A stretch of DNA of 64,000 nt, from assembly GCA_038087875.1 (NCBI GenBank), contig JAXLNO010003434.1, forward strand, positions 62,001 through 126,000, read 5' to 3'. Source of the stretch: Malacoraja senta (Eukaryota). Shown one piece after another: positions 1,297 to 24,222 of this stretch (the stretch's first letter is position 1; each line of letters starts with the position of its first letter). The position numbers were made by a program, and so were the translations under genes. The notes under the pieces are model-generated. The model did no database searches and had not been told where the DNA came from. It was given only the letters and a program-made list of their open reading frames with translations.

Positions 1297-1505
1297 CCTA
1301 TTTTCTATGCTTCTAAAAAGCTGGAGTAACTCAGCAGGTCAGGCAGCACTTCTGGGAAAAAGGAAAAGGTGACGATTTGTGTCGAGACCCTTCCCGAAAT
1401 GTCACCTATTCCTTTTCCCCAGAAATGCTGCCTGACCCGCTGAGTTACTCCTGCTTTTTGCATCTGCCTACAGTAAAACAAGCATCTGCAGTTCCTTCCT
1501 ACACA
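1297..1505. repeat. Inverted pair of Penelope-derived tail repeats
   Basis: gctggagtaactcagcaggtcaggcagca mirrored by tgctgcctgacccgctgagttactcc around a degenerate gtcgagaccc core. Confidence 0.7.
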
Positions 1506-1699
1506 GGAAAGTAGACTATCTGGTTTATCTAAAACTGCAGTTTGTGGAATTGACTGCATTCTGAATTGTAAAATAGTTATACTTTGAGAAACATCTATTC
1601 GGTTGTAAGATGCTATGTGAAATATGATTTTGTAATTGTTGTCCTTAAAACACCAATATAATCCCTACCATAAAACCTGATCCTGAAACTGTATTCACT

Positions 1700-1877
1700 G
1701 GCAATTAGTGACCAGAACAAGTGGTCTCATTCCCATTGGATCTAGTTATCAGGTTTGTGTATACATGGACCAATAATTAGCTTCACACCAGAGTTCTGTT
1801 AAAAAAGTGCAAGAGATTAAGTTACTGTTGCTGCATTTACTCTGCTGGTTAAATATTGTTGTGGGCGGCTGTTAAAC
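1700..1877 (+). promoter_or_regulatory. Candidate proximal promoter of the MHC class I-like gene
   Basis: Non-repeat DNA upstream of the leader ATG, with ATTGG (1735-1739), CCAAT (1770-1774) and GGGCGG (1863-1868); short motifs, could be chance. Confidence 0.3.
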
Positions 1878-1929
1878 ATGCTTCTTTTTACCTTACTCAA
1901 CACTTACGGTGTGGCCACTGTCTCCTCTG
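1878..1929 (+). CDS. Exon 1, signal peptide MLLFTLLNTYGVATVSS
   Basis: aaacATG, 17 mostly hydrophobic codons ending VSS, G|GTAAAC phase-1 donor matching the alpha1 acceptor (G+AT=Asp); 9 kb upstream so linkage is inferred. Confidence 0.6.
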
Positions 1930-4900
1930 GTAAACAATGCTCCTTCTACTTGTGAACTTTGAGGAAACAACAAAACTGATTCTATTTACTGTTGCACAGT
2001 ACCTGTGTTTGCCCTGGGTACATTGTCTTGGATGTATTAATTGAATGATTGAATTGAATGTATTAATAATTTTGGGTAACGGTCATTCCTGAGTTGTAAA
2101 AGCTCCTGTGGGAAGTTATATATACTATGGTTACCTTGGCAATCCATTGAACAGAGGAACTGAATACAGGGAAATAATGAACATAGAACATAGGACAATA
2201 CAGCATAGGAGCAGGTCCTTCAGTCCTTCAGTCTGAAGAAGGGTCTCGACCTGAAACGTCACCTATTCCTTTTCTCCAGAGATGCTGCCTGCCCCGCTGA
2301 GTTACTCCAGCATTTTGTGTCTACCTTCGGCCCACAATGTCTGTGCCGAACAAAATAAACTAATCTCCTCTACCTGTATGTGATCTGTATCCGGCCATTC
2401 CCTGCCTATCTATGTACCTATCTAAAAGCCTCTGAAATGTAACTGTTATATCTGCCACCACCATCACCACCACTGGCAGCGCGTTACAGATGTCCACCAC
2501 CCTCCACATAAAACAACTTGCTCCGCTCATCTCCTTTGAACATTGCCTCTCCAACCTTAAAGTGATGTTCTCTGGTCTTCAACATTTCCACCCTGGGAAA
2601 AAGGTTCTGGCTGTCCACTCTGTCTGTGCCTCTTACCATGTTGTGCACTTTCATCAGGTCTCCCTTCAACCTCCAGTATACAAGAGAAAACAATCCATGT
2701 TTGTCCAATCTGTTCTTGCACTAATACCTCAGACAGAATTCAGGTAAACCGGCGATGTGCACTTTCAATAAAGAAGTGACTTCTGCATTAGTAGGTGTTC
2801 CACCTCTCCAAGATTTCCTCAGCTGGTGTTAGACAGCCACATGATGGTAAAATTCAGCCTGCATTAAATGACCAATCAATGTTGTGTTAATGTTGTTGCC
2901 ATCTTGTTGTTTGTTACATGCTTCCTGTCCTACAGACCCTATCCATTACCCCACCACCACTTCCATATAACCATATAACCATATAACCATTACAGCACGG
3001 AAAGAGGCCATCTCGGCCCTTCAAGTCCGTGCCGAACACTTTTTTTTTCTTCCCCCTTCTTTCTTCTTACTTCCCCCTAGTCCCATCTACCTGCACTCAG
3101 ACCATATCCTTCCATTCCTTTCTCGTCCATATACCCATCCAATCTATTTTTAAAGGATAAAATCGAACCTGCCTCCACCACTTCCACTGGAAGCTCATTC
3201 CACACAGCTACCACTCTCTGAGTAAAGAAGTTCCCCCTAATGTTCCCCCTAAACTTCTGTCCCTTAATTCTCAAGTCATGTCCCCTTGTTTGAATCTTCC
3301 CTACTCTCAATGGGAAAAGCTTATCCACGTCAACTCTGTCTAACCCGCTCATCATTTTAAAGACCTCTATCAAGCCCCCCCTTAACATTCTGCGCTCCAA
3401 AGAATAAAGACCTAACTTGTTCAACCCTTCTCTGTAACTTAGTTGTTGAAACCCAGGCAACATTCTAGTAAATCTCCTCTGTACTCTCTCTATTTTGTTG
3501 ACATCCTTCCTATAATTAGGCGACCAAAATTGTACTCCATACTCCAGAATTGGCCTCACCAATGCCTTGTACAATTTTAACATTACATCCCAAATTCAAT
3601 ATTCAATGCTCTGATTTATAAAGGCCAGCAAACCAAAAACTTTCTTACCACCCTATCTACATGAGATTCCACCTTCAGGGAACTATGCACAGTTATTCCT
3701 AGATCCCTCTGTTCAACTGCATTCCTCAATTCGCTACCATTTACCATGTATGTCCTATTTTGATTTGTCCTGGCGAGATGTAGCACCTCACCTTTATCAG
3801 CATTAAACTCCATCTGCCATCTTTCAGCCCACTCTTCCAAATGGCCTAAATCTCTCTGTAGACTTTGAAAATCTACTTGATTATCCACAACACCACCTAT
3901 CTTAGTATCATCTGCATACTTACTAATCCAATTTTCCACACCATCATCCAGATCATTGATGTACATGACAAACAACAGTAGACCCAACACAGACCCCTGA
4001 GGCACCCCACTGGTCACCGGCCTCCAACCTGACAAACAGCCATCCACCATTACTCTCTGGCATCTCCCATTCAGCCACTCTTGAATCCATCTTGCTACTC
4101 CACCATTAATACCCAACAATTGAATCTTCTTAACCAACCTTCCATGAGGAACATTGTCAAAGGCTTTACTGAAGTCCATATAGACAACATCCACTGCTTT
4201 ACCCTCATCAATTTCCCTAGTAACCTCTTCGAAAAATTCAAGAAGATTAGTCAAACATGACATTCCAGGCACAAATCCATGTTGACTGTTCCTAATCAGA
4301 CCCTGCTTATCCAGATGCTTATATATATTATCTCTAAGTATCCTTTCCATTAATTTGCCCACCACTGACGTCAAACTAACAGGTCTATAATAGCTAGGTT
4401 TACTCTCACAACCCTTTTTGAACAACATGCGCTGTACGCCAATCCTCCGGCACTATTCCCGTTTCTAATGACATTTGAAATATTTCTGTCATAGCCCCTG
4501 CTATTTCTACACTAACTTCCCTCACTGTCCTAGAAAATATCCTGTCAGGACCTGGAGACTTATACATTTTCATATTTTTCAAAAGTGTCCGCACCTCCTC
4601 TTCTTTGAATCTCATAGTTTCCATTGCTACTCTGCTTGTTTCCCTTAGCTCACATAATTCCATATCCTTCTCCTTGGTGAATACCGACGAAAAGAAATTG
4701 TTCAATATCTCCCCCATCTCTTTTGGCTCTGCAGATAGCTGTCCACCCTGACTCTCTAATGGACCGATTTTATTCCTTGTTATCATTTTGCTATTAATAT
4801 AGCTGTAGAAACCCTTTGGATTTACTTTCACCTTACTTGCCAAAGCAACCTCATATCTTCTTTTAGCTTTTCTAATTTATTTCTTAATATTCTTTTTACA

Positions 4901-10900: not shown

Positions 10901-13900
10901 TCAAAGTTATTGTATTGTTATCAGTTTTAGCATTAATAACTTAGTTATTTTCAGTGAATGATACAATCATACTTATTTTTGTTTATGCATTGCAGATTTA
11001 CACCATCTTGCATTTTACTACCTGTTGAACCATGGATTGAATGAGCTGCCTGAGTACAGTATGGTAGCAATGCTGGATGACCTCCAGATAGCATATTTTG
11101 ACAGCACACTAGAGCGGGCTGTTGCCAGACAGCGATGGATGGCCCAGTCTTTCCCGCAGGATCACTGGGATTCAATGGCCATCACAGTTGCAGGTTTTCA
11201 TGGGATTGTCAGAGGAAATGCTGAGATAGTCTACCAACAGCAACATGGTATCTCGAGTAAGTGTCGTGAGCGGACCTGGGGTAGACACTCAGTGATGACA
11301 CAGATGGATTTTGTTTTAGTTTTGTTGCTGTCACATGATTCTCTGATACACTTTTTTTGCATGTTAGTCAATCACATCAAAGAAAACTATTCATAAATAC
11401 AATCAAACCAAACTCGTACAATAGGTAGAGCAAAGAGTGCAGAATGTAGTTCTCAGCTTTGTAAGGCACCAGTGCCAGAGACAAAGTCCAGTGTCTACAA
11501 TGGGATTGAGGTGAACCCTAGCATAAGGGAGGACTGTTCAGAAACCTGATAACATAGGGGAGGAAACAGTTACTGAGTCTGGTGGTGCACGCTTTAATGC
11601 TTACGTACCTTCTGCAGGAAGAAGAAGGAATGACCAGAGCGGGATGAATCTTTGATTATGTTGTCTGCTTTCCTGAGCCAGTTGAAATATAGATGGATTC
11701 ACTGGTGGGGAATCATGTTTGTGTGATCGACTGTGCTACATCTCCACCTCTCTGCAATTTCCAGCGGTCTTGGGCAGAACTCTTTCCAAACTAAGTTGTG
11801 ATGCAACCTGTCAGTATGCTTTCTATGGCACATTTGTAGAAGTTTGTAAGAGTCATTGGAGATGCCACATTTCCTTAGTCTCCTGAGGCAGTAGGTGAAC
11901 CAGAAGCTCTCAACCTTTTTCACTTCAGCACCATTGATGCTGTTTCAGACATTTACTCCATCACATTTTGATAGAGACACGGCCCATCGTCTATATTTAA
12001 TGTGTCCTAACTGCTGAACACCCATTGATAACAGTTGGCTGGTGATAGTCACTTTATGGGTTAAGCATTTGATATTCAACACCAGTAATAAGTGGATGGA
12101 TTGGATCATCTGTTTTATTGGGCTGGAATGAGGGAGAAACCATTAGTTTACTTATAGCCTGATCACCTAGAGATGGGACCTTGATTTAAGCTGGTTGATG
12201 GTGACTATGATGTATTCCCTCAACAATAATATTCTGTTAATCCAGCATTCCCTCAATATTGGCAACAATCCACAGAGGGTGTAGCAATCCCACACAGTGC
12301 AACAGCCTTGATGTACTTCCCATCTGCATTGCCTTAACCTTCAGACTGACCTGTTGGCTCTGTAGCATTGCCCATCTGACAATGCACTCCTTCCTCTGTT
12401 CTTTATGTACGACAGTGCAGAAATCTGAGTTCTACCCTTCTGACATAGCAGAACTCCTTTAGTGTTACATCCGCAACAGTAAAGCTTCCCCCCTCAACAC
12501 TTGAGGTTAGTCCATGCACTCAGTATATAAACCATGGGTCATTGAGTCATTGCGTCACACAGCATGGAAACTGGCCCTTCTGCTCACTGAATCCACACTG
12601 ATCATCCATTGTGCTAAGATGGAGTCACAGCAAACTGCAGATGCTGCCAATCTGAATTAAAAACAAACAGGAGGAACTCAATGAGTCAGGCAGCATGCTG
12701 TGGAAAAATGGACAGAAAACATATGAGACCAGGACCATTTAGAGTGATGGGGTAGAGTGGAGAAAGCTGGAAAGAAAAGTAGTCTGTGTGGGATAGTGTT
12801 AATATGCGGGGATCACTGGTCACTGCGGACTCGGTGGGCCGAAGTAAACCTCTGAAGTAAACCTCTGAAGTAAACCTGCTCCTGTGCTGTACAGCTCTAT
12901 GTTGTGTTCTGTTATGCCTGTTTGTACCATGCTGAGAACTGATTTGTAAATTGCCTCTCCCTTCCATCCACTCTCCCCAACCAAAATTCCCCACCTCAGC
13001 CCCAGCTGTTTTCTTTGTGCAGGGTTTCTGCGGCTGTGAAGTGGACAGTGACAATTCCACTGATGGGTTTGTCAGACTGGGTTATGATGGGGAGGATGCC
13101 TGTGCTTTTGACAAGGACAGAATGCGCTGGATTGCACTACGTCCAGATTTCCAGATGCTAGCAGATCGGTGGAATATCAACACCTTCATGAACAAGTATT
13201 TCAAAGATCTCCTGGAGAAGGACCGTGTGAAGTGGCTGCTGATATATCTGGAGTGTGGACAAGAAGCACTACAGAGGAGAGGTATACGACGTACGCACTC
13301 TGACTGATGGGCCAGAGGATATCCTCTGGATAGATCAGGTGGGAAATATCATGCACGTCAGGCTGTCACTTGAGTAATTATTTAGTTTAGTTTAGAGATA
13401 CAGCTCGGAAACCCACCGACACCGCACCGAGCAGCCATGCCCGCACACTAACACTATCCTACACACACTAGGGACAATTTGCATTTATACCAATCCAATT
13501 AACCTACAAATTTGTACGTCTTTCGAGTGTGAGGGGAAACCAAAGATCTCGGATAAAACCCACGCAGGTCACAGGGAGAACGTACAAACTGCGTAAAGAC
13601 AAGCACCCGTAGTTAGTAACAAACCCAGGTCTCTGGCGCTGTAAGGCAGTAGCTCCACCGCTTCGCCACCCTGTTCTACAACGTGGGTATCAGTAAATTG
13701 TCTGGCAACGTGCCTCTTAGATGGAGCCAGTGGGTAGGAAGTGCAAGTGAAAGATAAATATTGTACCAGCGTCCTCTATCCACAGTCATATAGATATTCA
13801 AGAAATGGAGGGATATGTATCTTGGTCTTATGTTTAGCATTGACCTTGTGGCCTGAAGGGTCTGTTGCTGTGCTGATCAGAAACCCAATCAGATTCTCTA

Positions 13901-16900
13901 TTTGCCTCTATTACTCCTTGGGATGGTGACATTCAATTTCCAACAGTTCTCTGGTTGAAGAACTTCTTTCTCCCATTCCCTCTTGGAATATTTTGTGTTA
14001 TTATTCAGCAGAGATTCATGAACAAGTAGAAGCAATCATGTCTACAGTATCAATCCCAATGGTGAGTTATACTCCTCCATTGGGCCCTGCATTCTCCTTT
14101 CATCTGCGCTGTCAGTTCAAGTCTGGAGCTAAGATAAGGAGCATGTCAGTGATATTAAAACTAAATGTTTTGTTGTTTTGCCAGAAATGCAAAATGAAAA
14201 GAGAAAAGGCTGTAAACTTTGTGCAAGATAGAACTGCAGATGATGGTTTACACCGAAGATAGAAGATGTTGGAGTACCTCAGTGGGTCAGATAGCATCTC
14301 TGGGCATTCCTTCTCTCCAGAGATGCTGCCTGACCTGCTGAGTTATTCCAGCATTTTGGGTCTAGGCTGGAAACTTTGTTCAGCTGGAGAAAAAACTGAT
14401 TGGGAAAGAGGTGAGTTGCAGTGATCTTACAATTGAAGGCTTTTGTTCATGTCTTCACTGATTCTGACGCTTCCTACACTTGCAGAAACCCCTGAGGTGT
14501 TTATTGGGATTAAACGTGATGAGTCACTATCACTGAGACTCTCCTGCCTTGTCACAGGCTTCTACCCACGGGGCATCGATGTAACGTGGCTGAGAGATGG
14601 TGAGGGAGACCACGAGTCTGAATCCAGTGATGATCTGTTGCCCAATTGGGATGGGACTTACCAGCTGAAGAATACAATTCAACTGAGTAGAGAAGATGTG
14701 GCAAAATTCTCCTGTTACATCGAACATGCAACTCTGCTGCAGGGAGTCAATGTTCCACAGGGTAAGTGGCAAGTCAATGAGGCTGATCACTTGAGACAAT
14801 AAACCTCCTGGACTGAGATAACAGCCTCAACACACTCTTAACTAAACTGTGCATTTAGATTTTAGACTTTAGAGATATGGTGCAGATACAGGCCCCACAG
14901 CTCACTGAGTCCTCGCTGAACAGTGATCATCCCGTACATTTACACTAACCAACACACTGGGGACAATTTACAATTTTACCTAAGCCAAGTAACCTTCAAG
15001 CCTGTATGCCTTTGGAGTGTGGGAGGAAACCGGAGCACCCGGAGAAAACCCACGCAGTCACAGGGAGAACATACAATGTCCTTGCAGACAGCACCTGTAG
15101 TCAGGATCAAACCCAGGTCTCTGGTGCAGTAAGGCAGCAGCTCTACCGCTACGCCACTGTGCCACCCATTATTAATTTGTGGTTATCTAATTGCCCAGAA
15201 TTATTGATAGTCAATGGAATGTGGTTTTACTTTAAGAGATACAGCGCAGAAACCGGCCCTTTGGCCCACGAGTCTGCGTCAACCAGCGATCCCTGCACAC
15301 TTACATTATCGTACTTATTAGGGGACAATTTACAATTATACCAAGCCAATTAACCTACAAACCTGTATGTCTTTGGACTGAGGGAGGAAACCGGAGATCC
15401 AGGGTAAAACCCACGCAAGTCCCGGGGAGAAGGTACAAACCTCTGTACAGACGGGACCCGTAGTCAGAATTGAACCGGGTCTCTGGCGCTGTAAGGCAGC
15501 AGTTCCACCGAGTGGGCAAAGCAGAGCCAAATGGAATACAGTGTAGCAAGTGTCTGGTTTTACATTTTGGCAGTCGGAATAAAGACATAGACTATTTAAT
15601 AAATGGGGAGAGAATTCAGAAATCTGAGCTACAAAGTGGGAGTACTAGTGCAGGATTCCCAAATAGTTCATTTGCAGATTGAGTCAGTGGTAAGTAAGGC
15701 AAATGCAATGCCAGCATTCATTTAACCATATAACCATATAACAATTACAGCACGGAAACAGGCCATCTCGACCCTTCTAGTCCGTGCCGAACACGTATTC
15801 TCCCCTAGTCCCATATACCTGCGCTCAGACCATAACCCTCCATCCCTTTCCCGTCCATATAACTATCCAATTTATTTTTAAATGATAAAAACGAACCTGC
15901 CTCCACCACCTTCACTGGAAGCTCATTCCACACAGCCACCACTCTCTGAGTAAAGAAGTTCCCCCTCATGTTACCCCTAAACTTCTGTCCCTTAATTCGG
16001 GGGGACTAGAAGTTTAGGGGGGACATTTCGGGGGGACTAGAAGATAAAAACAATGATATAATGCTGAGGATTTATCGGGCACTGGTGAGGATACATTTGG
16101 AATATTGTGAGCAGTTTTGGGCTCCATATTAGAAAGGATGTGCTGGCTTTGGAGAGGGTCCAGAGGAAGTGTGTCCTGGGGATGATTGATTTAACGTATG
16201 AGGAATGTTTGAAGTCTCTGTGCCTGCGCTCGTGGGATTTAGAAGGATGAGGGGGGAATCTCTGAAACATACCAGTTATTGAAAGTCCCAGTTAGTGGAT
16301 GTGGATAGGATGTTTTCAGTAATGGGAGAGTCTAGCACAGCCTCACAATAAAAATACGTACTTTCAAAATGGAGATGAGGAGGAATTTCATTAGTCACAG
16401 GGTGGTGAATCTGTGGAATTCATTGATACAGACAATTGTGTGGGTCAAGTCATTGCATATTTTAAAGCAGAGAATGATAGGTTCTTGATTAATATGGCTC
16501 CCAAAGGTTACAGGGAGAAGGCTGGAGAATGGGATTCAGAGGTAAAAATAGATCTGCCATGACTGAATGGTGGAGTAGACTCAATGGACTGAAAGGCCTA
16601 CTTCTGCTCCAATGGTAAAAAATATTCTTATGTCACCCTTAACTCACAGATCCAAATGTAGGAAGCAAGATAGGCTGATCCTGGCCAAGGTCTCTTATCT
16701 TATTTCTTGGGCATCTAGCTAATTTTTTTATAGTAGCTAGTTGCACAAAAGGCCAATAGTGGTGCCACATCCAACCCCATTATCAGTCTGAAGTAGCAGC
16801 ACCTGTTCTGTAGCTGACTTATTTGTTCCAGTCAAAACCTCTGCAAATATCTTCACACCAGGGCCAAGCTGACATGGTTAAAATTGCTGGTCACTACAAA

Positions 16901-19900
16901 TAGACAGTAGTGTTAATGTCTGAGTGTGCCTATGTGTGTGTGTGTGCGCGCGCGTGTGTGTTTGTGTGCGCTCATGTGTGTGAGACAGAGAGAGGGGGAG
17001 AGGGAGGGAGGGAGGGAGGGAGGGAGGGAGGGAGAGAAAGAGAGTGTGTGTGTGTGTGAGAATATCAAACTCTCAGATATTGAAATATCAGCAAAGTTTA
17101 AAACCTTTGAAGTTTTATCAACTATAAGTGGGTTCACTTTTATTTGCTAAAATAACAATGGTCAACATAAGAAAATAGCCTTGTTGACCTCTACACTGCA
17201 TATAGTCATCTATTTCTGACATATGCTTGATTCTTTAAATTCATAATTAAATGCTGCAGATAAAATCTCAACGCTAATATGAACTTCAAAGATTTTTCAT
17301 TGATCTATTTAAACATCCATCGTCTGGACAATTACATAAATCTAAGACTTTGTTATTTTTATTTAGATGTGAACAATGCTAGTTTAATGTAGATAATAAA
17401 ATCATTACAGGACTTCCGGTGGGGGCGACATGCTGGAGTAGTCGCACTTTTCCACGCTCCCGACCTTTTCACCTCCAACTTTTATTACAGCTCAGTCTAA
17501 GTTTTTTAACCACCCACAAACATTTAAACATCATTGTGAGTACCTCTCTATGCTGTAAAGATGCCAAACAAAGGAAAGAAAGCGGAGCAAAAGACAGAAG
17601 ACCCGGCGGCCAGCGCCAGTATGGCCACGCTAGCAGCCATGTTAACAGAACATAAGGTATTGTTACTGGCAGAATTCAACACTGCGTTCACCAAATTGGA
17701 AACGAAGCTGGACAATATCCAGACCACTATGTTAGACCACCAACACCGTCTCTCATCATTAGAGTCTTTTGCCGCTACCACTAGCCAAGATATACGAGCT
17801 ATAACGTTAATGTTAACTACGGTGACCGAAGAGAACGCCAAGGTAAAGGCTAAGCTTATTAGCCTGGAAGGCAGGAGTTGCCGAAATAACGTAAGGATAG
17901 TGGGTCTTCCCGAGAATATCGAGGGCTCCCAAACAACAGCGTTTTTTTCTCAACTTCTGCTCGAGACTCTTGGCGAACACATACTGGAATCAACCCCGGA
18001 ACTAGACCGAGCCCACCGTACGCTAACAGCCAAGCCAAGCCCTGGTGAGAAACCCAGAGCAGTTGTGATCTGCTTTCATAGATACCAGACCCGTGAGTTC
18101 GTGGTACGTGAGGCTCGGAGGCAGAGGGGTAAGCTGAAATACAAAGATACCCCGTTCCACATTTTCGAAGACCACTGTCCCGACATAGTTGAACAACGCT
18201 TCGCGTACCGAGACGTTATGAAGGAGCTGTATAACCTGGGTTTCAAACCCTCCCTTCATTATCCAGCCAAGCTGTTCATAATGTCCGGGGAGGGAAAGAG
18301 GCGACGACTAACATCTCCCGAGGACGCTCGGGATTTCATCTCATCTCACCATCGACGCAGACCGGGACCCACAGATGACTGACTTCGTTCAGTACGTCTA
18401 TATTCGAGTGGCACAGGGGCCCGGTTAACCTATGGTTACATGGACTAACTTTAGCTTGACTGTTCCTAATAACTAGCTATGGTTAGCGTTCAGCATTGCT
18501 GATTATACTAGACCCCGGTTTCGAAATGTATGAGGCAGGTAAGGAATCACCAGGATTTGTGAATGTTTTATATCAACTTTTTCTTATATTGGTCTATGCA
18601 TAATCGTGCTTGAGGGGTCCCTCACCAGCATATGCTATAAAGCTGGGCTTAAGGGACCCACTTTGTGGTTTGTGATTTGGTCTCTGCCTTCCTGTTCTTA
18701 GCAGCTGGCCGCTAACGCTGTCAGCACCTGGCTAGTTTGCTTATACTAATCTTCATAACGAACTGTCTGGGGCTGATAAGAGCTCATTACAGCCAGGGCG
18801 GTGTTATACAAATCTTATCTTATACCTTTTTTGTTTAACAAAACATAATTGATGCCTTTAGCGCTGTGCTTTAATCCAACAGCCCAGTTTGTAATTTGCT
18901 AACTTTTCCAACGCCAACTCTCTCTTTATACTTTGTCGATTTTAAGACATACTATGCAACACCAAAGGAAGTTATTCTGGCTCCACTTACACGTTAGCCG
19001 GTTTATTTAGTATCACCATTTTGTTAATAGGCTTTGTCTTATTGTGACTATCATCATTGCTATTATTACTATAAGGGTTAGCAATGGTACTGGCAGTGCA
19101 ACCATTATGGCTATTATTTTAACCTTGCATTTACCAATGTATGTTTATCTTACTTTATTCCTACTCTGTTTTTCAAATTATTATCATCACCGTCATTATT
19201 ACTATTACTATACTTATTTTATTTCATGTTACCTTATCGACACTGAGTGACTCCATCGCTTTGGGAAGCTGTGATATAGGGAGTTAAGATCGGATATCTC
19301 CATGCGGAAGCGAGGACAACGCACCTTGGTGCAAGGGGCACTTAAGGTTCAGTTGAGACATGGGGGATCTCAGGTCTGGAGACTCAGGTTTGAAAGATGG
19401 TTAAATGATATGTGTTCCACTTGTTTGCCGTGTGTGTATGTTTTTGTTCTTGTTTTTTTTTTTTTTTTTTTTTTTGTTGTTGTTTTATTTTACTTCACAT
19501 ATATATATTCACCCCCCCCCCTCCCCCTCCACATCCCCACTCTCGGCAGCTGGCTTCGATGCGCTCTTCCGTCTCGTTTTGCAGAACTACAGCGCATTAC
19601 CCATATAGCTAAAAATGGCCAACACAAACGATACTTTTAGATTTGTCTCGTGGAACGTGAGAGGGATGGGAAGTCCTACCAAAACTGATAGGATCTTGGC
19701 CCATTTGCAACAGCTCAAAGGCGATATATTCTTTATCCAAGAGACCCACCTTCGCAACAGAGAGGTAACACGGCTTAAGAGAGGCTGGATTAGTCAACTA
19801 TTTCACTCGAAATTTAATAATAGGGCCAGGGGCACCGCTATCCTGATTCGTAAGAACATTAAGTTCGAACCACAGAAAACTGTGGAAGACCCTGCTGGTC

Positions 19901-22900
19901 GCTTTGTCATGGTGTCGGGCAAATTGCAAGACACACCTGTCATATTGGCATGCATTTATGGACCCAACTGGGATGACAGCTCATTTATAACTAAATTTTT
20001 TACATCTCTCCCAAATATTGAAAATCACCATGTCATTGTGGGTGGAGATTTTAATCTGGTCCAAGATCCTATACTGGATAGATCTTCGAATAAAGCCTCT
20101 ACTTTAACTAAATCCGGTAAGACTCTGCATGTTCTCGCCAAACAACTGGGGCTCACAGATCCATGGAGATTTATATTCCCCACGACTAAATTATTTTCAT
20201 TTTTCTCCCACGTACATCGTATGTTTACCCGTATAGACTTCTTTCTTTTAGATAATAGATTGCTTTCCAAAATCAAATCCAGTGAGTACCATAGCATCGT
20301 AATATCAGATCATGCTGCGACCTCCCTTGATCTTCATTTTCGTAAACGAACTAACCCCTTTAAGTGGAGGTTCAACTCCTCATTATTAGCAGAGGCTCAC
20401 TACATGCAATTCTTGCACTCCCAAATCACCCTATATTTTGAGCTGAATGACTCGCCGGACATAGAAAGAGGTATACTTTGGGAAGCTTCAAAAGCCTATA
20501 TTAGGGGCCAACTCATTTCCTTTATCTCCAACCTGAAAAGAACGGAGACGTTCCAAACGGCAGATCTGTTACAAAAAATAAAGGACATTGATGACAAATA
20601 TGCATCTGACCCAAACCCTAATCTCTATAGAGAACGCCTTAGGCTACAAACAGACTTTGACCTCATATCCATTAATAAAGCCAAACTACGACTGCTTAAA
20701 TCTAGGCAAATACTTTTTTGAATCTGGGGATAAAGCTGAAAAGCTTTTGGCCCATCAGGCCAGAACAGATGCGCCTTCACGGTTAATTCCAGCCATTAGA
20801 TCCAGCTCAGGGGAGACTCATACTGATCCTCTCAGAATTAATGAAGCATTTGCTAAATTCTACACTGAACTATACACTTCCGACTGTCCCCCCACTGCAG
20901 GTGACATGTTCAGTAGTATGACGCTTCCCCGAATAGACGAAGAAGCCATGAGAGACTTGGGTGGTCCCATAACTGTAGCTGAGGTCCAAGCAGCCATCAC
21001 ATCGCTGCAAAGCGGAAAGTCACCCGGCCCTGACGGCTTCTCTGTAGAATATTACAAAGCTTTCTCTGACCTCCTTGCATCAGTCCTGAGAGACATGTAC
21101 AACGAGGCGTTTTTAAATCGTCGCCTACCGCCCACCTTGTCGTGGGCTACCATCTCCCTAATTCTTAAAAAGGAGAAAGATCCCCTGCTTTGTGGTAGCT
21201 ATAGACCAATCTCACTCCTGAATGTGGACCTCAAAATCCTTTCTAAAGCCCTTGCGCTTCGTCTTCAGCGAGTGATGCCCTCTATTATCTCGTTGGATCA
21301 AACAGGGTTTATACCTGGTCGACAGTCTTCCCATAATACTAGGCGTCTCCTTAACATCATTCACTCTTCGAGTAATGAGACCCCGGAGATGGTGGTCTCC
21401 CTCGATGCCGAAAAGGCCTTCGACAGGGTCGAGTGGAGGTACCTATATGAAGCGATGGATAGGTTTGTCCTCGGTAACAGTTTTATTCTCTGGGTGAGCC
21501 TATTATATTCATCCCCGGTGGCTTCAGTACAAACAAACGACATACTGTCGCCCCACTTCACACTTCAGAGAGGTACCAGACAGGGTTGCCCGTTATCTCC
21601 ACTCTTGTTTGATGTTGCGATAGAACCCCTGGCGGTCTGGTTACGCGCAGAGAAGGGCTTTAAAGGTATTACACGGTTTGACACAACTCATAAAGTCTCA
21701 TTGTATGCGGATGACCTGCTCCTGTTCATCTCGAACCCAGTCAGTTCTCTCCCTGTGATTATGAATATTTTAGAACGGTTTGGTGCATATTCTGGTTATA
21801 AACTTAACTACCAAAAGAGTGAGCTATTACCGATTAACTTACCGGCTAAGCAGCTCCCTCGCTCTTTAACCTCATTCAAAAGGGCAGAGGATGGGTTTCG
21901 CTATCTCGGCGTTTTTATCACAATTCCCTTATCTGATATGTTCCGCACAAACTTTTTGCCTCTGGTTGAGAAAGCCGAAAAAGATTTTGATCGCTGGTCA
22001 GTCTTACCACTATCCCTCGTGGGCCGGATAAATCTGGTTAAGATGGTTGTCCTACCCAAATTCCTGTATCTTTTCCAGCATGTCCCCATACTTATCACCA
22101 AATCTTTTTTTGACAAATTAGAAAGGACAATATCTAAATTCTTATGGGGTAGCAAACCGGTCAGAATCCGAAAGGCGATACTGCAGTCGCCTAAGAGTGA
22201 TGGCGGTTTGGCCCTCCCTGATTTTAGGCGATACTACTGGGCAGCTAACTTGCAAAAACTCCTGTATTGGATGAATGATGATTGCGAGCACCCACCGATC
22301 TGGGTATATATGGAAAAGGCGAGTTCACGTCTCCCATTGCGGTCTGTCCTATGCTCCCAACTCCCCCTTTCTATAACATCTGTGGGTGCAGGCCCAATTG
22401 TGTCCCTTTCGCTCAAGATATGGAGTCAATTTAGGAAAAACCGGTTTACAGGGTCCTTCCATCTTGACCCCACTGCTTAAAAATCACATTTTTAAACCTT
22501 CAAGTATAGACCACGCATTTAAAACCTGGCATAGTAATGGCATCAGTAGTATTAAAAACCTATATAAGGATGGTATCTTCTCATCTTTCGCGGCGCTCTC
22601 GTCTAACTACAACCTCCCAAACTCCCACCTTTTTCGGTTTTTCCAGATTAGGGATTTTGTGAGGAAGACATTTCCCTACTTCCCAAATCGCCCTCCTGAA
22701 CCCCTGACTGATATCATCTTAGCTTTAGACCCCAATCGGAAGAAATGCATCTCTATTTTGTATAATTTGCTAGGGTCGGTTTTATTGAAACCTCATACCT
22801 CATTAAAAGCTGCGTGGGAGGGAGAGCTGAATACGAAATTAACAGACCAGCAATGGGACTCTGCCTTGGATTTGATCCACTCTTCTTCCATATGCGCTCG

Positions 22901-23625
22901 TCATGGCCTAATCCAATGCAAAGTCCTTTACAAAGTCCACTATACAAATGCAAGATTAGCTAGAATGTACCCAGCTGTCAATGACACCTGTAACAGATGT
23001 AGTCAATCTCCTGCCAACCATAGCCACATGTTTTGGTCTTGCCCTAAGCTAGCAGCCTTTTGGAGGAGTGCTTTTGAATTGATAAGCAGAGCTTACGACC
23101 AGACTATTCTTCCAAATCCAATGTCAGCCATTTTCGGTACCCCTCCCAATACCAACCTCTCTGTTGCGGTGAAACGGGTCCTAGCTTTTACAACCTTGTT
23201 AGCCCGGAGACTGATCTTGCTTAGTTGGAGGCTCACCTGTCCCCCGACACACGCCCGTTGGATTAAGGAGGTGCTTTACAATCTGAAACTTGAAAAACTT
23301 AGGTTCTCTCTCAAAGGCTCTACCAAGACATTCCTAGATACATGGAACCCTTTCTTTGAACTGGTTAACTCTCTTACCTTGTCCCCGGACTCGGAAGAGG
23401 ACTGAGTGTTCTCCATCATCGTTTTGTTCTACAGCAGCTGCTTTCCCCTTAATCCCCCCTCCCTACAATTGTTTATTTAGATATATATGTATATATATAT
23501 ACTTTTTTTTTAAATTTTCATTTTATTTTATATATTTATATATAAACAACACTCACATACGTACACATCCGCACACAAATGGTAGAATAGACGAAACAAA
23601 ATGTGCTATATAAAAGAAATAAAAA

Positions 23626-23675
<50 letters not shown>

Positions 23676-24222
23676 TTTTTATTTCTTTTATATAGCACAT
23701 TTTGTTTCGCCTATTCTACCATTTGTGTGTGGATGTGTACGTATGTGAGTGTTGTTTGTCCCCGTTTGGCTCCGACCTGACTTGGGTGGGTTGAAGGTGG
23801 GTATGGGTAAAGGTTTTGAGGATCGCTTACATACTGTTGTACAATTATGCCTTGATTATTACTGTCTGTTATTATTGTATGTATGTTAATTGCCGTGAAA
23901 TTCAAATAAAAAGATTAAATTCAAAAAAATAAAATCATTACAATGTCGTTATTGATCAATAAATGTTTAAAATGCCCTATATCTGCCAACAGAGAGGGCA
24001 GCGAAAGAAGATATAAAGATTAGGATCGTGACTGGAGCTGTAATCGTTCCTCTTATTCTCCTGGGGATCATCCTTGGAATTGGTTGCTGGAAGAAGAGGA
24101 AAAGGAGAAAAATTCTCAATGAACAGGGACCAGCTGACAACAGCAGAGACCAGGAGAGGACTGCAGTGACCATGAAGCACAACCAGCTTCCGTTGGGAAG
24201 CAGAGGAGGTCTACCGGAATGA
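1878..24222 (+). CDS. Non-classical MHC class I-like heavy chain gene, join(1878..1929,10996..11256,13006..13281,14486..14761,23993..24222), 364 aa
   Basis: Five exons, all phase-1 GT-AG introns, lengths 52+261+276+276+230=1095 nt, open throughout; domain order leader-alpha1-alpha2-alpha3(C1-set Ig)-TM-cytoplasmic tail. Confidence 0.8.
2233..2260 (+). ncRNA. Minimal type I hammerhead ribozyme motif in a Penelope-derived tail
   Basis: CTGAAGA-A-GGGT-CTCG-ACCT-GAAAC-GTC: full core, stem II with one G-U pair, palindromic ACGT helix III; helix I only 2-3 bp. Confidence 0.55.
2963..5821 (-). mobile_element. 5'-truncated CR1 LINE with near-complete, frameshifted ORF2 (APE endonuclease + RT)
   Basis: ORFs 5496-5825 (VAISETWL, GGVALL), 4877-5383, 4406-4843, 3616-4428 (PQGS, YADD), 3077-3583; (TTATATGG)n 3' tail; possible 9-bp TSD ccaccactt 2954-2962 / ccacgactt 5822-5830. 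Confidence 0.93.
6500..7045. repeat. Cluster of Penelope-derived tail repeats in both orientations
   Basis: Several gaaggaactgcagatgctgg..gctggagtaactcag..ggcagcatc units. Confidence 0.75.
6956..6983 (+). ncRNA. Minimal type I hammerhead ribozyme motif, best-preserved copy
   Basis: CTGAAGA-A-GGGT-CTCG-ACCC-GAAAC-GTC; all core nucleotides, perfect 4-bp stem II, GUC cleavage triplet. Confidence 0.65.
7115..7163. repeat. C-rich tract (G-quadruplex-prone on the minus strand)
   Basis: Multiple C4-C9 runs separated by single A/T. Confidence 0.7.
7486..9890 (-). mobile_element. Decayed Tc1/mariner transposon with IR/DR-type long TIRs, interrupted by an L2 LINE
   Basis: TA|ctgtgacctccataatg left end; internal direct repeat ccataatgtttsggaca; inverted copy of the inner TIR at ~9806-9890; transposase remnants VFWSDDTK (8287-8487) and WPSQSPDLN (7887-8117). 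Confidence 0.9.
8744..9630 (+). mobile_element. 5'-truncated L2-clade LINE nested in the Tc1 transposase
   Basis: KTEVILFG..SRLDYCN..LQLVQNAAARL..LHWLPV..RAFSVAAP; one TGG>TAG stop at 9355-9357; aataaag(tta)n tail; Tc1 sequence resumes on both sides. Confidence 0.9.
10491..10805 (+). mobile_element. tRNA-derived V-SINE (HE1-like)
   Basis: Degenerate A/B boxes, V-domain-like core, CR1-like tail gggcctgtttcc..(actaa)n. Confidence 0.8.
10996..11256 (+). CDS. Exon 2, MHC class I alpha1 domain
   Basis: ttgcag|AT acceptor, A|GTAAGT donor, 261 nt; DLHHLAFYY..LPEYSMVAMLDDLQIAYFDS..RQRWM..DHWD carries class I alpha1 motifs (H3, DD, FDS, W51, W60). Confidence 0.9.
11330..11945 (-). mobile_element. 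Rex1/Babar LINE 3' fragment in intron 2
   Basis: KVESF..LRRLRK remnants, homologous to 46020-46755. Confidence 0.7.
13006..13281 (+). CDS. Exon 3, MHC class I alpha2 domain
   Basis: ccccag|CT acceptor (in-frame alternative AG at 12998-12999), G|GTATAC donor, 276 nt; Q96, GC101, GYDGED, W133, W147, W167, Y171, LQRR. Confidence 0.92.
13381..13673 (-). mobile_element. tRNA-derived V-SINE in intron 3
   Basis: Head ggtggcgaagcgg..gggtttgtt, core, (tttag)n tail. Confidence 0.85.
14486..14761 (+). CDS. Exon 4, MHC class I alpha3 (C1-set Ig) domain
   Basis: ttgcag|AA acceptor, G|GTAAGT donor, 276 nt; LSCLVTGFYPRGIDVTW..LLPNWDGTYQL..FSCYIEH. Confidence 0.95.
14855..15510 (-). mobile_element. Two tandem V-SINE copies (about 14855-15165 and 15228-15510)
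   Basis: Each has the ggaggaaaccggag core and an accc(g/a)ggtctctgg B-box region. Confidence 0.8.
15510..16600 (+). mobile_element. Old CR1 fragment split by a younger antisense CR1 3' end (15725-15997)
   Basis: Host CR1 reads through on both sides; insert has the same ccatataa tail and body as 2963-3260. Confidence 0.75.
16925..17058. repeat. Compound microsatellite (TG)n-(CG)n-(TG)n, (GA)n/(GGAG)n
   Basis: Direct reading. Confidence 0.9.
17561..18382 (+). CDS. L1 ORF1p (coiled coil + RRM/CTD), 273 aa, intact
   Basis: LEGRSCRNNVRIVGLPE, LDRAHR, PRAVVICFHRY, IFED, YPAKL motifs. Confidence 0.88.
   Translation: MPNKGKKAEQKTEDPAASASMATLAAMLTEHKVLLLAEFNTAFTKLETKLDNIQTTMLDHQHRLSSLESFAATTSQDIRAITLMLTTVTEENAKVKAKLISLEGRSCRNNVRIVGLPENIEGSQTTAFFSQLLLETLGEHILESTPELDRAHRTLTAKPSPGEKPRAVVICFHRYQTREFVVREARRQRGKLKYKDTPFHIFEDHCPDIVEQRFAYRDVMKELYNLGFKPSLHYPAKLFIMSGEGKRRRLTSPEDARDFISSHHRRRPGPTDD
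19615..23405 (+). pseudogene. L1 ORF2 (APE endonuclease, RT, C-terminal Cys-rich domain) with two frameshifts
   Basis: VSWNVRG, IQETH, GGDFN, SDH; QGCPLSP, YADD; CNRC..H..FWSC; frame changes at ~20708-20719 and ~22436-22442; no in-frame stop along the repaired reading path. Confidence 0.92.
23544..23757. repeat. 214-bp near-perfect AT-rich palindrome
   Basis: 87-bp arms (23544-23630, 23671-23757) with 2 mismatches around a self-complementary (TA)20. Confidence 0.95.
23993..24222 (+). CDS. Exon 5, connecting peptide, transmembrane helix and cytoplasmic tail with stop
   Basis: caacag|AG acceptor in phase with alpha3; ERAAKEDIKIR-IVTGAVIVPLILLGIILGIGCW-KKRKRRK..GLPE*. Confidence 0.75.

What the first reader, a model, noticed from the sequence alone, without database searches (positions are those of the whole stretch)
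13224..13226. Canonical alpha2 Cys164 replaced by Arg (CGT), with three extra cysteines nearby
Seen: LLEKD-R-VKWLLIYLE where class I has C164; CGT is one transition from TGT. C101 remains, and extra Cys occur at ~99 (FCGC), ~124 (DACAF) and ~174 (LECG). Known: the C101-C164 disulfide is nearly invariant and needed for normal class I folding. Inference: a null or hypomorphic allele, early pseudogenisation despite an open CDS, a consensus error, or an alternative disulfide pattern or covalent dimer.
Basis: partly seen in the sequence, partly recalled or inferred. Interest (0 to 1): 0.7.

Follow-up and report, generated by a model that had tools for sequence, protein, structure and literature searches.

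The report
Lost disulfide cysteine, decaying skate MHC-I copy
One copy of an old shark-and-ray immune gene (a non-classical MHC class I gene, sister of the lipid-type "UGA" gene) has changed the cysteine that normally staples its binding groove into arginine. The copy looks like a duplicate drifting towards being a dead gene, not a new way of folding.

Summary
Codon 13224-13226 is CGT (Arg) at the Cys164-equivalent column of an MHC class I alpha2 exon. Cys101 is kept, and extra cysteines sit at about 99, 124 and 174.

The gene is a complete five-exon, 364-codon member of an elasmobranch lineage sister to shark UGA (PDB 9ch4).

- **Ancestral state:** all 12 other species in the lineage have LLEKDCVKW. 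The closest relative, Leucoraja erinacea XP_055486430, has TGT at the same base, so Arg is a recent T>C change.
- **Extra cysteines:** they are lineage features that coexist with Cys164 (C99 in all species, C174 in most, C124 in batoids). They are not compensation.
- **Relaxed constraint:** window versus L. erinacea gives dN/dS 0.68, against 0.16-0.23 on long branches. The window copy also has private V238D, P61A, a one-codon insertion, a 6.5-kb sense L1 in intron 4 and a weakened first donor.
- **Paralogue:** a second L. erinacea paralogue has TGA at this very codon.

Most likely this is a real substitution in a decaying or hypomorphic duplicate.

Reads from the window's own sample were not available, so an assembly error is not excluded.

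The scan has already noted this lineage on other pieces of this genome, including another reported lesion at Cys164.

The parts
1878..1929 (+). Leader exon (MLLFTLLNTYGVATVSS, phase-1 end); donor G|GTAAAC
   Evidence: Local alignment to the leaders of P0153/P0155, score 55; the same exon is present in L001. The donor differs from L001 (GTAAGC) at +5.
10996..11256 (+). Alpha1 exon
   Evidence: tblastn of P0001 gives 94% identity; weak Pfam MHC_I hit; splice sites ttgcag| and |GTAAGT.
13000..13281 (+). Alpha2 exon. The acceptor at 13000 is the one used by batoid gene models; an in-frame alternative AG gives a start at 13006.
   Evidence: Pfam MHC_I 53.2 bits; 95% identical to P0001; acceptor comparison.
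13029..13037 (+). CGC motif: extra Cys99 (13029-13031) and canonical Cys101 (13035-13037)
   Evidence: Codons TGC and TGT. CGC is present in all 13 sequences of the lineage and absent from UGA.
13101..13103 (+). Extra Cys at about 124 (DACAF), found in batoids only
   Evidence: sharks have Y or F here.
13224..13226 (+). CGT = Arg at the Cys164-equivalent position (the finding)
   Evidence: L001 has TGT and L002 has TGA at the aligned codon.
13254..13256 (+). Extra Cys at about 174 (LECG), at the end of the alpha2 helix
   Evidence: Cys in 8 of the 12 other species (9 of 13 counting the window).
14486..14761 (+). Alpha3 (C1-set Ig) exon. The Ig disulfide cysteines are intact (14545, 14713). Private changes: G209E, Q211L, V238D (14608-14610) and an extra codon at 14629-14631.
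   Evidence: Pfam C1-set 52.9 bits; polarised changes; organism A lacks the 3-nt insertion (table 4).
17410..23928 (+). Full-length sense L1 in intron 4, flanked by the 14-nt target-site duplication ATAAAATCATTACA (17396-17409 and 23929-23942). It ends 64 nt upstream of the TM-exon acceptor; 50 nt remain after the downstream target-site copy.
   Evidence: Long ORFs; the insertion is absent from the collinear L001; duplication coordinates.
23993..24222 (+). Connecting peptide, transmembrane and cytoplasmic exon, with stop TGA at 24220-24222
   Evidence: 87-89% identical to the P0001 tail.

Best explanation
The window holds one skate copy of the elasmobranch non-classical MHC class I lineage that is sister to shark UGA. 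A recent germline T>C transition turned the invariant Cys164 codon (TGT) into CGT (Arg).

In class I molecules this cysteine bonds to Cys101 and ties the alpha2 helix to the sheet floor. Without it, Cys101 is left unpaired next to the lineage's own extra Cys99, and a long charged side chain sits where the bond used to be. The expected result (inferred, not shown) is slower or failed folding, poor beta2-microglobulin assembly and little surface protein.

The change is tolerated because this copy is a redundant duplicate under relaxed selection. It is best read as a hypomorphic or null copy at an early stage of pseudogenisation whose reading frame is still open. Whether Arg164 is fixed or polymorphic in the species is unknown.
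For: - **Invariance of Cys164:** all 12 other species of the lineage have LLEKDCVKW (Leucoraja, Pristis, Mobula, Hypanus, Pristiophorus, Heptranchias, Scyliorhinus, Stegostoma, Hemiscyllium, Mustelus, Cetorhinus, Chiloscyllium). UGA and classical class I also have the cysteine.
- **Polarity:** the window and L001 are sisters (100/100) inside the batoid clade. L001 has TGT, and L002, Pristis and Stegostoma have T at the first base.
- **Relaxed constraint:** dN/dS between window and L001 is 0.68 over alpha1-alpha3. Skate-Pristis, skate-Stegostoma and Pristis-Stegostoma give 0.16-0.23. Polarised counts are N10:S4 on the window branch and N11:S5 on the L001 branch. The pooled 21:9 rejects omega 0.17 (p=0.0004) and 0.23 (p=0.006) but not neutrality (p=0.19).
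- **Conserved-site hits:** of 153 sites at least 90% conserved in 11 outgroup species, the window has three private departures (C164R, V238D, P61A) and L001 has none. The window also has a private one-codon insertion in alpha3.
- **Other handicaps:** a 6.5-kb sense L1 in intron 4 and a +5 G>A change in the first donor; neither is present in L001.
- **Duplicates of this gene decay in skates:** L. erinacea locus L002 has TGA at the same codon, and no alpha1 or TM exon was found there.
- **Published knowledge:** mutations at positions 101 and 164 abolish HLA expression (PMC7233585, citing Warburton et al. 1994).
Against: - The 364-codon frame is fully open, and every splice site is canonical.
- The L001 copy shows the same raised dN/dS yet keeps Cys164, so relaxed constraint alone does not single out this copy.
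- 3 versus 0 private hits at conserved sites is not significant (Fisher p=0.69).
- Large shark class I lineages lack the alpha2 disulfide altogether, so a class I fold can exist without it.
- There is no expression data for the window's species. The one RNA run laid was from another organism and only about 6% of it was read.
- The base call could not be checked against the assembly's own reads.
Confidence: 0.6

Rival explanations
1. This is a working gene with a tolerated or newly useful change. The molecule folds without the alpha2 disulfide, as many shark non-classical class I molecules do, and Arg164 alters the groove or its dynamics.
For: The reading frame and splice sites are intact. About 55 of 80 shark class I hits carry V101 with L/F/Y/S/G at 164, so they have no alpha2 disulfide. 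The rest of the alpha2 domain is very well kept: the only other differences from L001 are at variable sites.
Against: The natural disulfide-less lineages replace both cysteines with hydrophobic residues. Here Cys101 stays and residue 164 is a charged Arg. Cys164 is invariant across 12 other species of this particular lineage. dN/dS is near neutral, and the copy has other private radical changes (V238D, P61A).
Confidence: 0.2
2. This is an assembly or consensus error, or a rare or somatic variant. The animal's true germline codon is TGT.
For: It is a single-base difference from the ancestral codon. No reads of the window's own sample were available.
Against: The context is not a homopolymer or other error-prone run. 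The window differs from its nearest relatives at many other sites in the same 3.8 kb: at least 21 window-specific substitutions were polarised. One more real substitution is therefore unremarkable. Substitution errors in modern consensus assemblies are rare (general knowledge, not tested here).
Confidence: 0.07
3. The protein adopts an alternative disulfide pattern or forms a covalent dimer. The free Cys101 pairs with one of the extra cysteines (for example a strained Cys99-Gly-Cys101 bond) or with another chain.
For: After C164R the alpha2 domain has four cysteines. Cys99 and Cys101 lie on the same face of one strand in the model of the orthologue (strand 91-101 of P0001, pLDDT about 95). C-X-C disulfides are known in other proteins (my own knowledge).
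Against: All three extra cysteines predate the change and coexist with Cys164 in the orthologues, so nothing evolved to compensate. A 99-101 bond would not tie the helix to the floor. By homology, positions 124 and 174 lie at opposite ends of the platform. No model coordinates were available to measure distances.
Confidence: 0.05

Closest known systems
Shark non-classical MHC class I UGA (PDB 9ch4, released 2026-03-18); UFA and UGA are described as CD1-like lipid binders in PMC12562908
   Same: It is the best sequence and structure match in the PDB. The phmmer E-value is 2.9e-60 for the L. erinacea orthologue. Foldseek ranks it first, with TM 0.87 by target. It forms the sister clade with 99/98 support. 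It shares the domain layout, the anchor-poor hydrophobic alpha1 motifs and the LLE(K/N)DC motif.
   Different: Identity is only about 38-45%. UGA has Phe, not Cys, two residues before Cys101 and keeps Cys164. The window's lineage is a separate, unnamed sister lineage. Lipid binding has not been shown for it.
Leucoraja erinacea XP_055486430.1 (locus L001) and XP_055486496.1 (locus L002)
   Same: L001 is collinear with the window over about 30 kb at 87-93% nucleotide identity and has the same five exons. Alpha2 is 95% identical and all extra cysteines are shared. L002 is a third, more distant copy.
   Different: L001 has TGT (Cys) at codon 164 and lacks the L1. L002 has TGA (stop) at the same codon, and no alpha1 or TM exon was found in it.
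Engineered and natural HLA class I variants that lose Cys101 or Cys164
   Same: The same bond is lost through a change at the same position. Published work reports lost or much reduced expression (PMC7233585 citing Warburton et al. 1994). From memory, low-expression HLA alleles with Cys164 changes also exist; I could not find them in the library.
   Different: Those are peptide-presenting classical molecules in mammals. The effect on a skate non-classical molecule is inferred, not measured.
Shark multi-copy non-classical class I genes annotated 'F10 alpha chain-like' that lack the alpha2 disulfide
   Same: They are class I heavy chains of elasmobranchs with no Cys at 164.
   Different: They have lost both cysteines and put hydrophobic residues at both sites (V101 with L/F/Y at 164), a paired replacement conserved across species. 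The window has a one-sided, charged replacement that is private to one copy.
MR1 (the name that automatic annotation gives these genes)
   Same: It is the best-scoring mammalian structure for the alpha2 exon (E 1.5e-14).
   Different: The window's gene is not an orthologue. Identity is about 30%, and the ligand-binding Lys43 of MR1 aligns with Ala in this lineage. The tree places the lineage with UGA.

Membership tests
MHC class I heavy chain | Alpha1-alpha2 platform domains | tested here: met
   Pfam PF00129: the alpha2 exon scores 53.2 bits (cut-off 28.3); the alpha1 exon alone scores 22.3 bits. The model of the orthologue shows the usual strand and helix order with pLDDT above 90.
MHC class I heavy chain | Membrane-proximal C1-set Ig domain with its disulfide, then a TM segment and a tail; one exon per domain in phase 1 | tested here: met
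   C1-set 52.9 bits; Cys217 and Cys273 are present; the spliced 364-aa product has a TM segment.
MHC class I heavy chain | Alpha2 intradomain disulfide Cys101-Cys164 | tested here: not met
   Cys101 is present, but position 164 is Arg. This feature is not universal in elasmobranch class I.
Elasmobranch UGA-sister lineage (unnamed in the papers read) | Groups with the one-per-species clade of sharks and rays, sister to UGA | tested here: met
   ML tree: window plus L001 100/100; within batoids 100/100; 13-row clade 100/99; sister to the UGA orthologue P0027 99/98. P0027 matches 9ch4 at E 1e-138.
Elasmobranch UGA-sister lineage (unnamed in the papers read) | Hallmark motifs CGC (99-101) and LLEKDCVKW (159-167) | tested here: inconclusive
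   CGC is present. The second motif is present except for its cysteine (LLEKDRVKW).
Pseudogene (disabled copy) | Stop codon, frameshift, lost exon or lost splice site | tested here: not met
   All five exons are open with GT-AG sites. The only lesser defects are a +5 G>A change in donor 1 and an intronic L1.
Pseudogene (disabled copy) | Loss of purifying selection (dN/dS near 1, hits at invariant sites) | tested here: met
   Omega is 0.68 against 0.16-0.23 on long branches. The pooled N:S of 21:9 rejects the baseline (p=0.0004-0.006) but not neutrality. Private C164R, V238D and P61A. The signal is shared with the L001 branch.
Pseudogene (disabled copy) | No expression | not testable with these tools
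   No RNA run of the window's species was served. One RNA run of another organism gave no exon reads.
MR1 | Orthology and the Schiff-base Lys43 | tested here: not met
   Lys43 aligns with Ala; the tree places the gene with UGA, not with tetrapod genes.

The most novel reading that the evidence does not exclude
The Arg164 copy is expressed and works. In this lineage the invariant Cys-Gly-Cys on the groove floor is a reactive thiol pair. Removing the Cys164 partner frees Cys101, so the groove could hold a ligand covalently or switch with redox state. A weaker variant of this reading is that codon 164 is a recurrent target when copies of a massively amplified skate class I array are silenced. CGT occurs here and TGA in L. 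erinacea; the scan also reports a 2-nt deletion elsewhere in this genome, which I did not check.
Probability: 0.06. Interest if true: 0.7.

Novelty: new member of a known kind. Interest (0 to 1): 0.25.

Why it matters
On its own this is a small result: one more decaying copy in a duplicated immune gene cluster.

Its value is as context for the UGA-sister lineage, an old, strongly conserved, probably non-peptide-presenting class I molecule of sharks and rays.
- In skates the gene is no longer single-copy, and its copies evolve almost neutrally.
- The lineage's three 'extra' cysteines are ancestral features, not repairs.
- The conserved Cys-Gly-Cys on the groove floor deserves a look when the protein is studied.

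It also cautions against treating the Cys101-Cys164 bond as universal, since most shark non-classical class I sequences retrieved here lack it.

Tried and rejected
- **Raw-read check of 13224.** The two run searches found no holder of the window's own sequence. The single read-laying run showed organism A at about 97% identity, organism B at about 93% (L001-like at every polarised site), and an RNA run of organism C with reads only on transposons.
- **Inference from the missing row.** I first took the absence of a 13224 row to mean that organism A shares the C. I then saw that single-contig rows appear only when at least 31 nt from a contig end in some run, and 13224 is 19 and 15 nt from the ends. 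The state in A is therefore undetermined, and I withdrew that inference.
- **Short protein fragments.** A search for predicted protein fragments of the alpha2 exon from other skates found nothing.
- **Baseline dN/dS among close rays.** The baseline therefore rests on Pristis and Stegostoma.
- **Cys-Cys distances.** The structure tool returns no coordinates, so distances could not be measured. I used only the secondary structure and confidence of the orthologue's model. The window's own spliced protein could not be folded because it has no single reference.
- **Papers.** I found no paper naming this lineage or describing 9ch4. PMC7002201 is not held. Searches for low-expression HLA alleles at Cys164 found nothing usable.
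- **A second class I gene in the window.** None was found.
- **Rejected reading.** A lineage-wide loss of the disulfide was my first guess at 60%. The orthologue alignment refuted it.

Full report
**What is in the sequence**

Codon 13224-13226 is CGT. It lies in an open exon (13000 or 13006 to 13281) whose translation matches Pfam MHC_I at 53.2 bits. The exon aligns without gaps to the alpha2 domain of human MR1, with the Arg opposite the helix cysteine of the alpha2 disulfide. Cys101 is present (13035-13037).

**The gene**

It is on the + strand and complete:
- leader exon 1878-1929;
- alpha1 exon 10996-11256;
- alpha2 exon 13000/13006-13281;
- alpha3 exon 14486-14761;
- one exon for the connecting peptide, membrane anchor and tail, 23993-24222.

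Spliced, it gives 364 codons with no stop. All junctions are GT-AG in phase 1, and the Ig-domain cysteines are intact. It is the only class I gene in the window.

Two blemishes are private to this copy when compared with the collinear Leucoraja erinacea locus:
- The first donor reads GTAAAC instead of GTAAGC.
- A 6.5-kb sense L1 (17410-23928) sits in intron 4, flanked by the 14-nt target-site duplication ATAAAATCATTACA. Its 3' end is 64 nt upstream of the last acceptor, and 50 nt remain after the downstream target-site copy.

**Which lineage**

An exhaustive HMMER search with the alpha2 exon found one 95%-identical protein, XP_055486430 of L. erinacea. A search with that protein found one relative each in Pristis, Mobula, Hypanus, Heptranchias, Scyliorhinus, Stegostoma, Hemiscyllium, Mustelus, Cetorhinus and Chiloscyllium. 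In Pristiophorus it found one full-length relative plus a shorter fragment model. Identities are 54-72%, and all are auto-named 'MR1-like'.

In a maximum-likelihood tree these form a 13-row clade (100/99) that broadly groups sharks and rays as the species tree does, though several inner forks are unresolved. The window and L. erinacea are sisters (100/100) inside the batoids. The sister group (99/98) is represented by a Pristiophorus protein that matches PDB 9ch4 at E 1e-138. Foldseek's title for 9ch4 is 'shark nonclassical MHC class I, UGA'.

A 2025 review reports, as a personal communication, that UFA and UGA are CD1-like, single- or low-copy, lipid-binding molecules (PMC12562908). An earlier paper mentions UFA as unpublished (PMC10751288). 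I found no published name for the window's lineage. It is not MR1: the ligand-binding Lys43 of MR1 aligns with Ala.

**Is Arg164 a lineage feature? No**

Every one of the 12 other species has LLEKDCVKW. The aligned DNA reads TGT in L. erinacea L001 and CGT in the window. Pristis and Stegostoma have TGC. Arg is therefore a recent T>C transition on the window's own branch.

The same alignment settles the 'extra cysteines':
- The Cys two residues before Cys101 (CGC) is in all 13 sequences of the lineage.
- The Cys at about 174 is in 8 of the 12 other species (9 of 13 counting the window).
- The Cys at about 124 is in the batoids only.

All three sit beside an intact Cys164, so none is a response to its loss. 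In the AlphaFold model of the L. erinacea protein (pLDDT about 95 over alpha2):
- the CGC pair lies on the first alpha2 strand;
- Cys124 lies on the third strand;
- Cys164 lies in mid-helix;
- Cys174 is the last helix residue.

No coordinates were returned, so distances were not measured.

**Is this copy under selection?**

L. erinacea has at least two loci:
- L001 is intact.
- L002 has TGA at the very same codon 164. No alpha1 or TM exon was found within 10 kb on either side.

Over 1.37 kb around alpha2 the three sequences relate as ((window, L001), L002).

dN/dS between window and L001 is 0.68 over alpha1-alpha3, and 0.54 over the whole CDS. The same exons give 0.16-0.23 between skates and Pristis, skates and Stegostoma, and Pristis and Stegostoma. 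Polarised with those outgroups, the window branch has 10 replacement and 4 silent changes, and the L001 branch has 11 and 5. The pooled 21:9 rejects omega 0.17 (p=0.0004) and 0.23 (p=0.006) but not neutrality (p=0.19).

Of 153 sites at least 90% conserved in 11 outgroup species, the window has three private departures (C164R, V238D in alpha3, P61A in alpha1). L001 has none, although 3 against 0 is not significant. The window also has a private extra codon in alpha3, which the nearest relative in the read data lacks.

On such a short branch (about 14 substitutions in 801 nt), an open frame is weak evidence for function. By my rough estimate, a neutral copy would still be open in perhaps one case in four or five.

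**Reads**

The runs served do not include the window's own sample.
- Organism A (two samples) holds sequence about 97% identical.
- Organism B holds sequence about 93% identical. It matches L001 at every polarised site, so it is L. erinacea or a near relative.
- Position 13224 is covered by contigs of A, but it is only 19 and 15 nt from their ends. Single-contig rows in the table all lie at least 31 nt from an end in some run, so the state in A cannot be read off. I do not claim that A shares the Arg.
- The RNA run (organism C, about 6% read) gave reads only on transposons.

One oddity remains. Over unique intron and exon bins the k-mer depth is about 1300-4300 and 150-440 in the two A samples, but about 2-15 in B. 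Scaled to the transposon bins, the locus is about 70-fold more abundant in A in both samples. Either those libraries are targeted or the segment is highly amplified there. Earlier notes of this scan, which I did not check, say that a class I-like family exceeds 100 copies in this genome. They also say that several other pieces carry intact or broken copies of this lineage, and that one has a 2-nt deletion 'at Cys164'. The ancestral context ACTGTGTGAAG contains a (TG)3 run, which could explain a 2-nt slip but not the two point changes.

**How it most likely works**

In class I molecules the Cys101-Cys164 bond ties the second half of the alpha2 helix to the floor. [quoted passage not shown] 1994).

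Here the loss is one-sided and non-conservative. Cys101 is left unpaired beside Cys99, and Arg replaces a buried bond. I infer slow or failed folding and little surface protein, in a copy that selection no longer protects.

This is a real germline substitution in a decaying or hypomorphic duplicate (confidence 0.6). The steps shown are the substitution, its polarity, the invariance elsewhere, the raised dN/dS and the dead paralogue. The steps inferred are the folding defect and the lack of function.

**Rivals**

1. A working disulfide-less molecule (0.2). About 55 of 80 shark class I hits lack both cysteines (V101 with L/F/Y/S/G at 164), so the fold can do without the bond. Those lineages, however, made a paired hydrophobic replacement that is conserved across species.
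2. An assembly error or rare variant (0.07). This is untested. The context is not error-prone, and the window has at least 21 other private substitutions in the same 3.8 kb.
3. An alternative disulfide or dimer (0.05). The extra cysteines are ancestral. Only a strained Cys99-Cys101 bond is sterically conceivable, and it would not replace the lost tie.

**Verdict**

The finding itself is ordinary: a new member of a known kind, a missense-damaged duplicate. The lineage around it is the more interesting object, and the scan has already met it on other pieces of this genome.

Noticed in passing
window 13029-13037; alignment A1: The UGA-sister lineage has an invariant Cys-Gly-Cys: an extra Cys two residues before Cys101, present in all 13 sequences from sharks and rays. 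UGA (9ch4) has Phe there. It is an odd-numbered, probably unpaired thiol on the groove floor.
   Followed up: partly
L002:11725-11997 (L. erinacea JAMYXN010000412.1): A second L. erinacea copy has TGA at exactly the codon that is CGT here and TGT in L001. It also has several radical changes, and no alpha1 or TM exon was found in the 24-kb locus. NCBI models it as a 263-aa protein that skips the second half of alpha2.
   Followed up: yes
window 17396-23942: A full-length sense L1 with a 14-nt target-site duplication (ATAAAATCATTACA) sits in intron 4. It ends 64 nt upstream of the TM-exon acceptor (50 nt remain after the downstream target-site copy) and is absent from the collinear L. erinacea locus.
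   Followed up: yes
window 1929-1935: The donor of intron 1 is G|GTAAAC, whereas L. erinacea has G|GTAAGC. This is a +5 G>A change that should weaken the site. The leader exon lies 9 kb upstream of alpha1, with transposons in between.
   Followed up: partly
window 10950-14800, runs X1/X2 against X5: K-mer depth over unique parts of the gene is about 1300-4300 and 150-440 in two samples of organism A (97% identical) but 2-15 in organism B. Relative to the transposon bins, that is about 70-fold more in A. The cause is either a targeted library or a roughly 100-copy amplification of this segment.
   Followed up: partly
proteins P0164-P0224: About 55 of 80 shark class I proteins retrieved (auto-named 'F10 alpha chain-like') have Val at 101 and Leu, Phe, Tyr, Ser or Gly at 164. 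Whole elasmobranch lineages therefore lack the alpha2 disulfide. A few have V101 with a lone Cys164.
   Followed up: partly
window 13219-13229: The ancestral context ACTGTGTGAAG holds a (TG)3 run across codon 164, and the T>C change made a CpG. An earlier scan note reports a 2-nt deletion at Cys164 in another copy of this genome; a slip in this run would explain it.
   Followed up: no
L001:12983-13020; P0001 residues 181-192: The NCBI model of the L. erinacea gene carries 12 residues (GTRPRHSDWWNG) read from the intron after alpha2, and they have very low model confidence (pLDDT below 50). The conserved donor (GAG|GTACAC) gives a normal alpha2-alpha3 junction, so this looks like an annotation artefact.
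   Followed up: partly
window 14629-14631 and 14608-14610: The alpha3 domain has a private extra Asp codon and a Val>Asp change at a position that is Val in all 11 outgroup species.
   Followed up: yes
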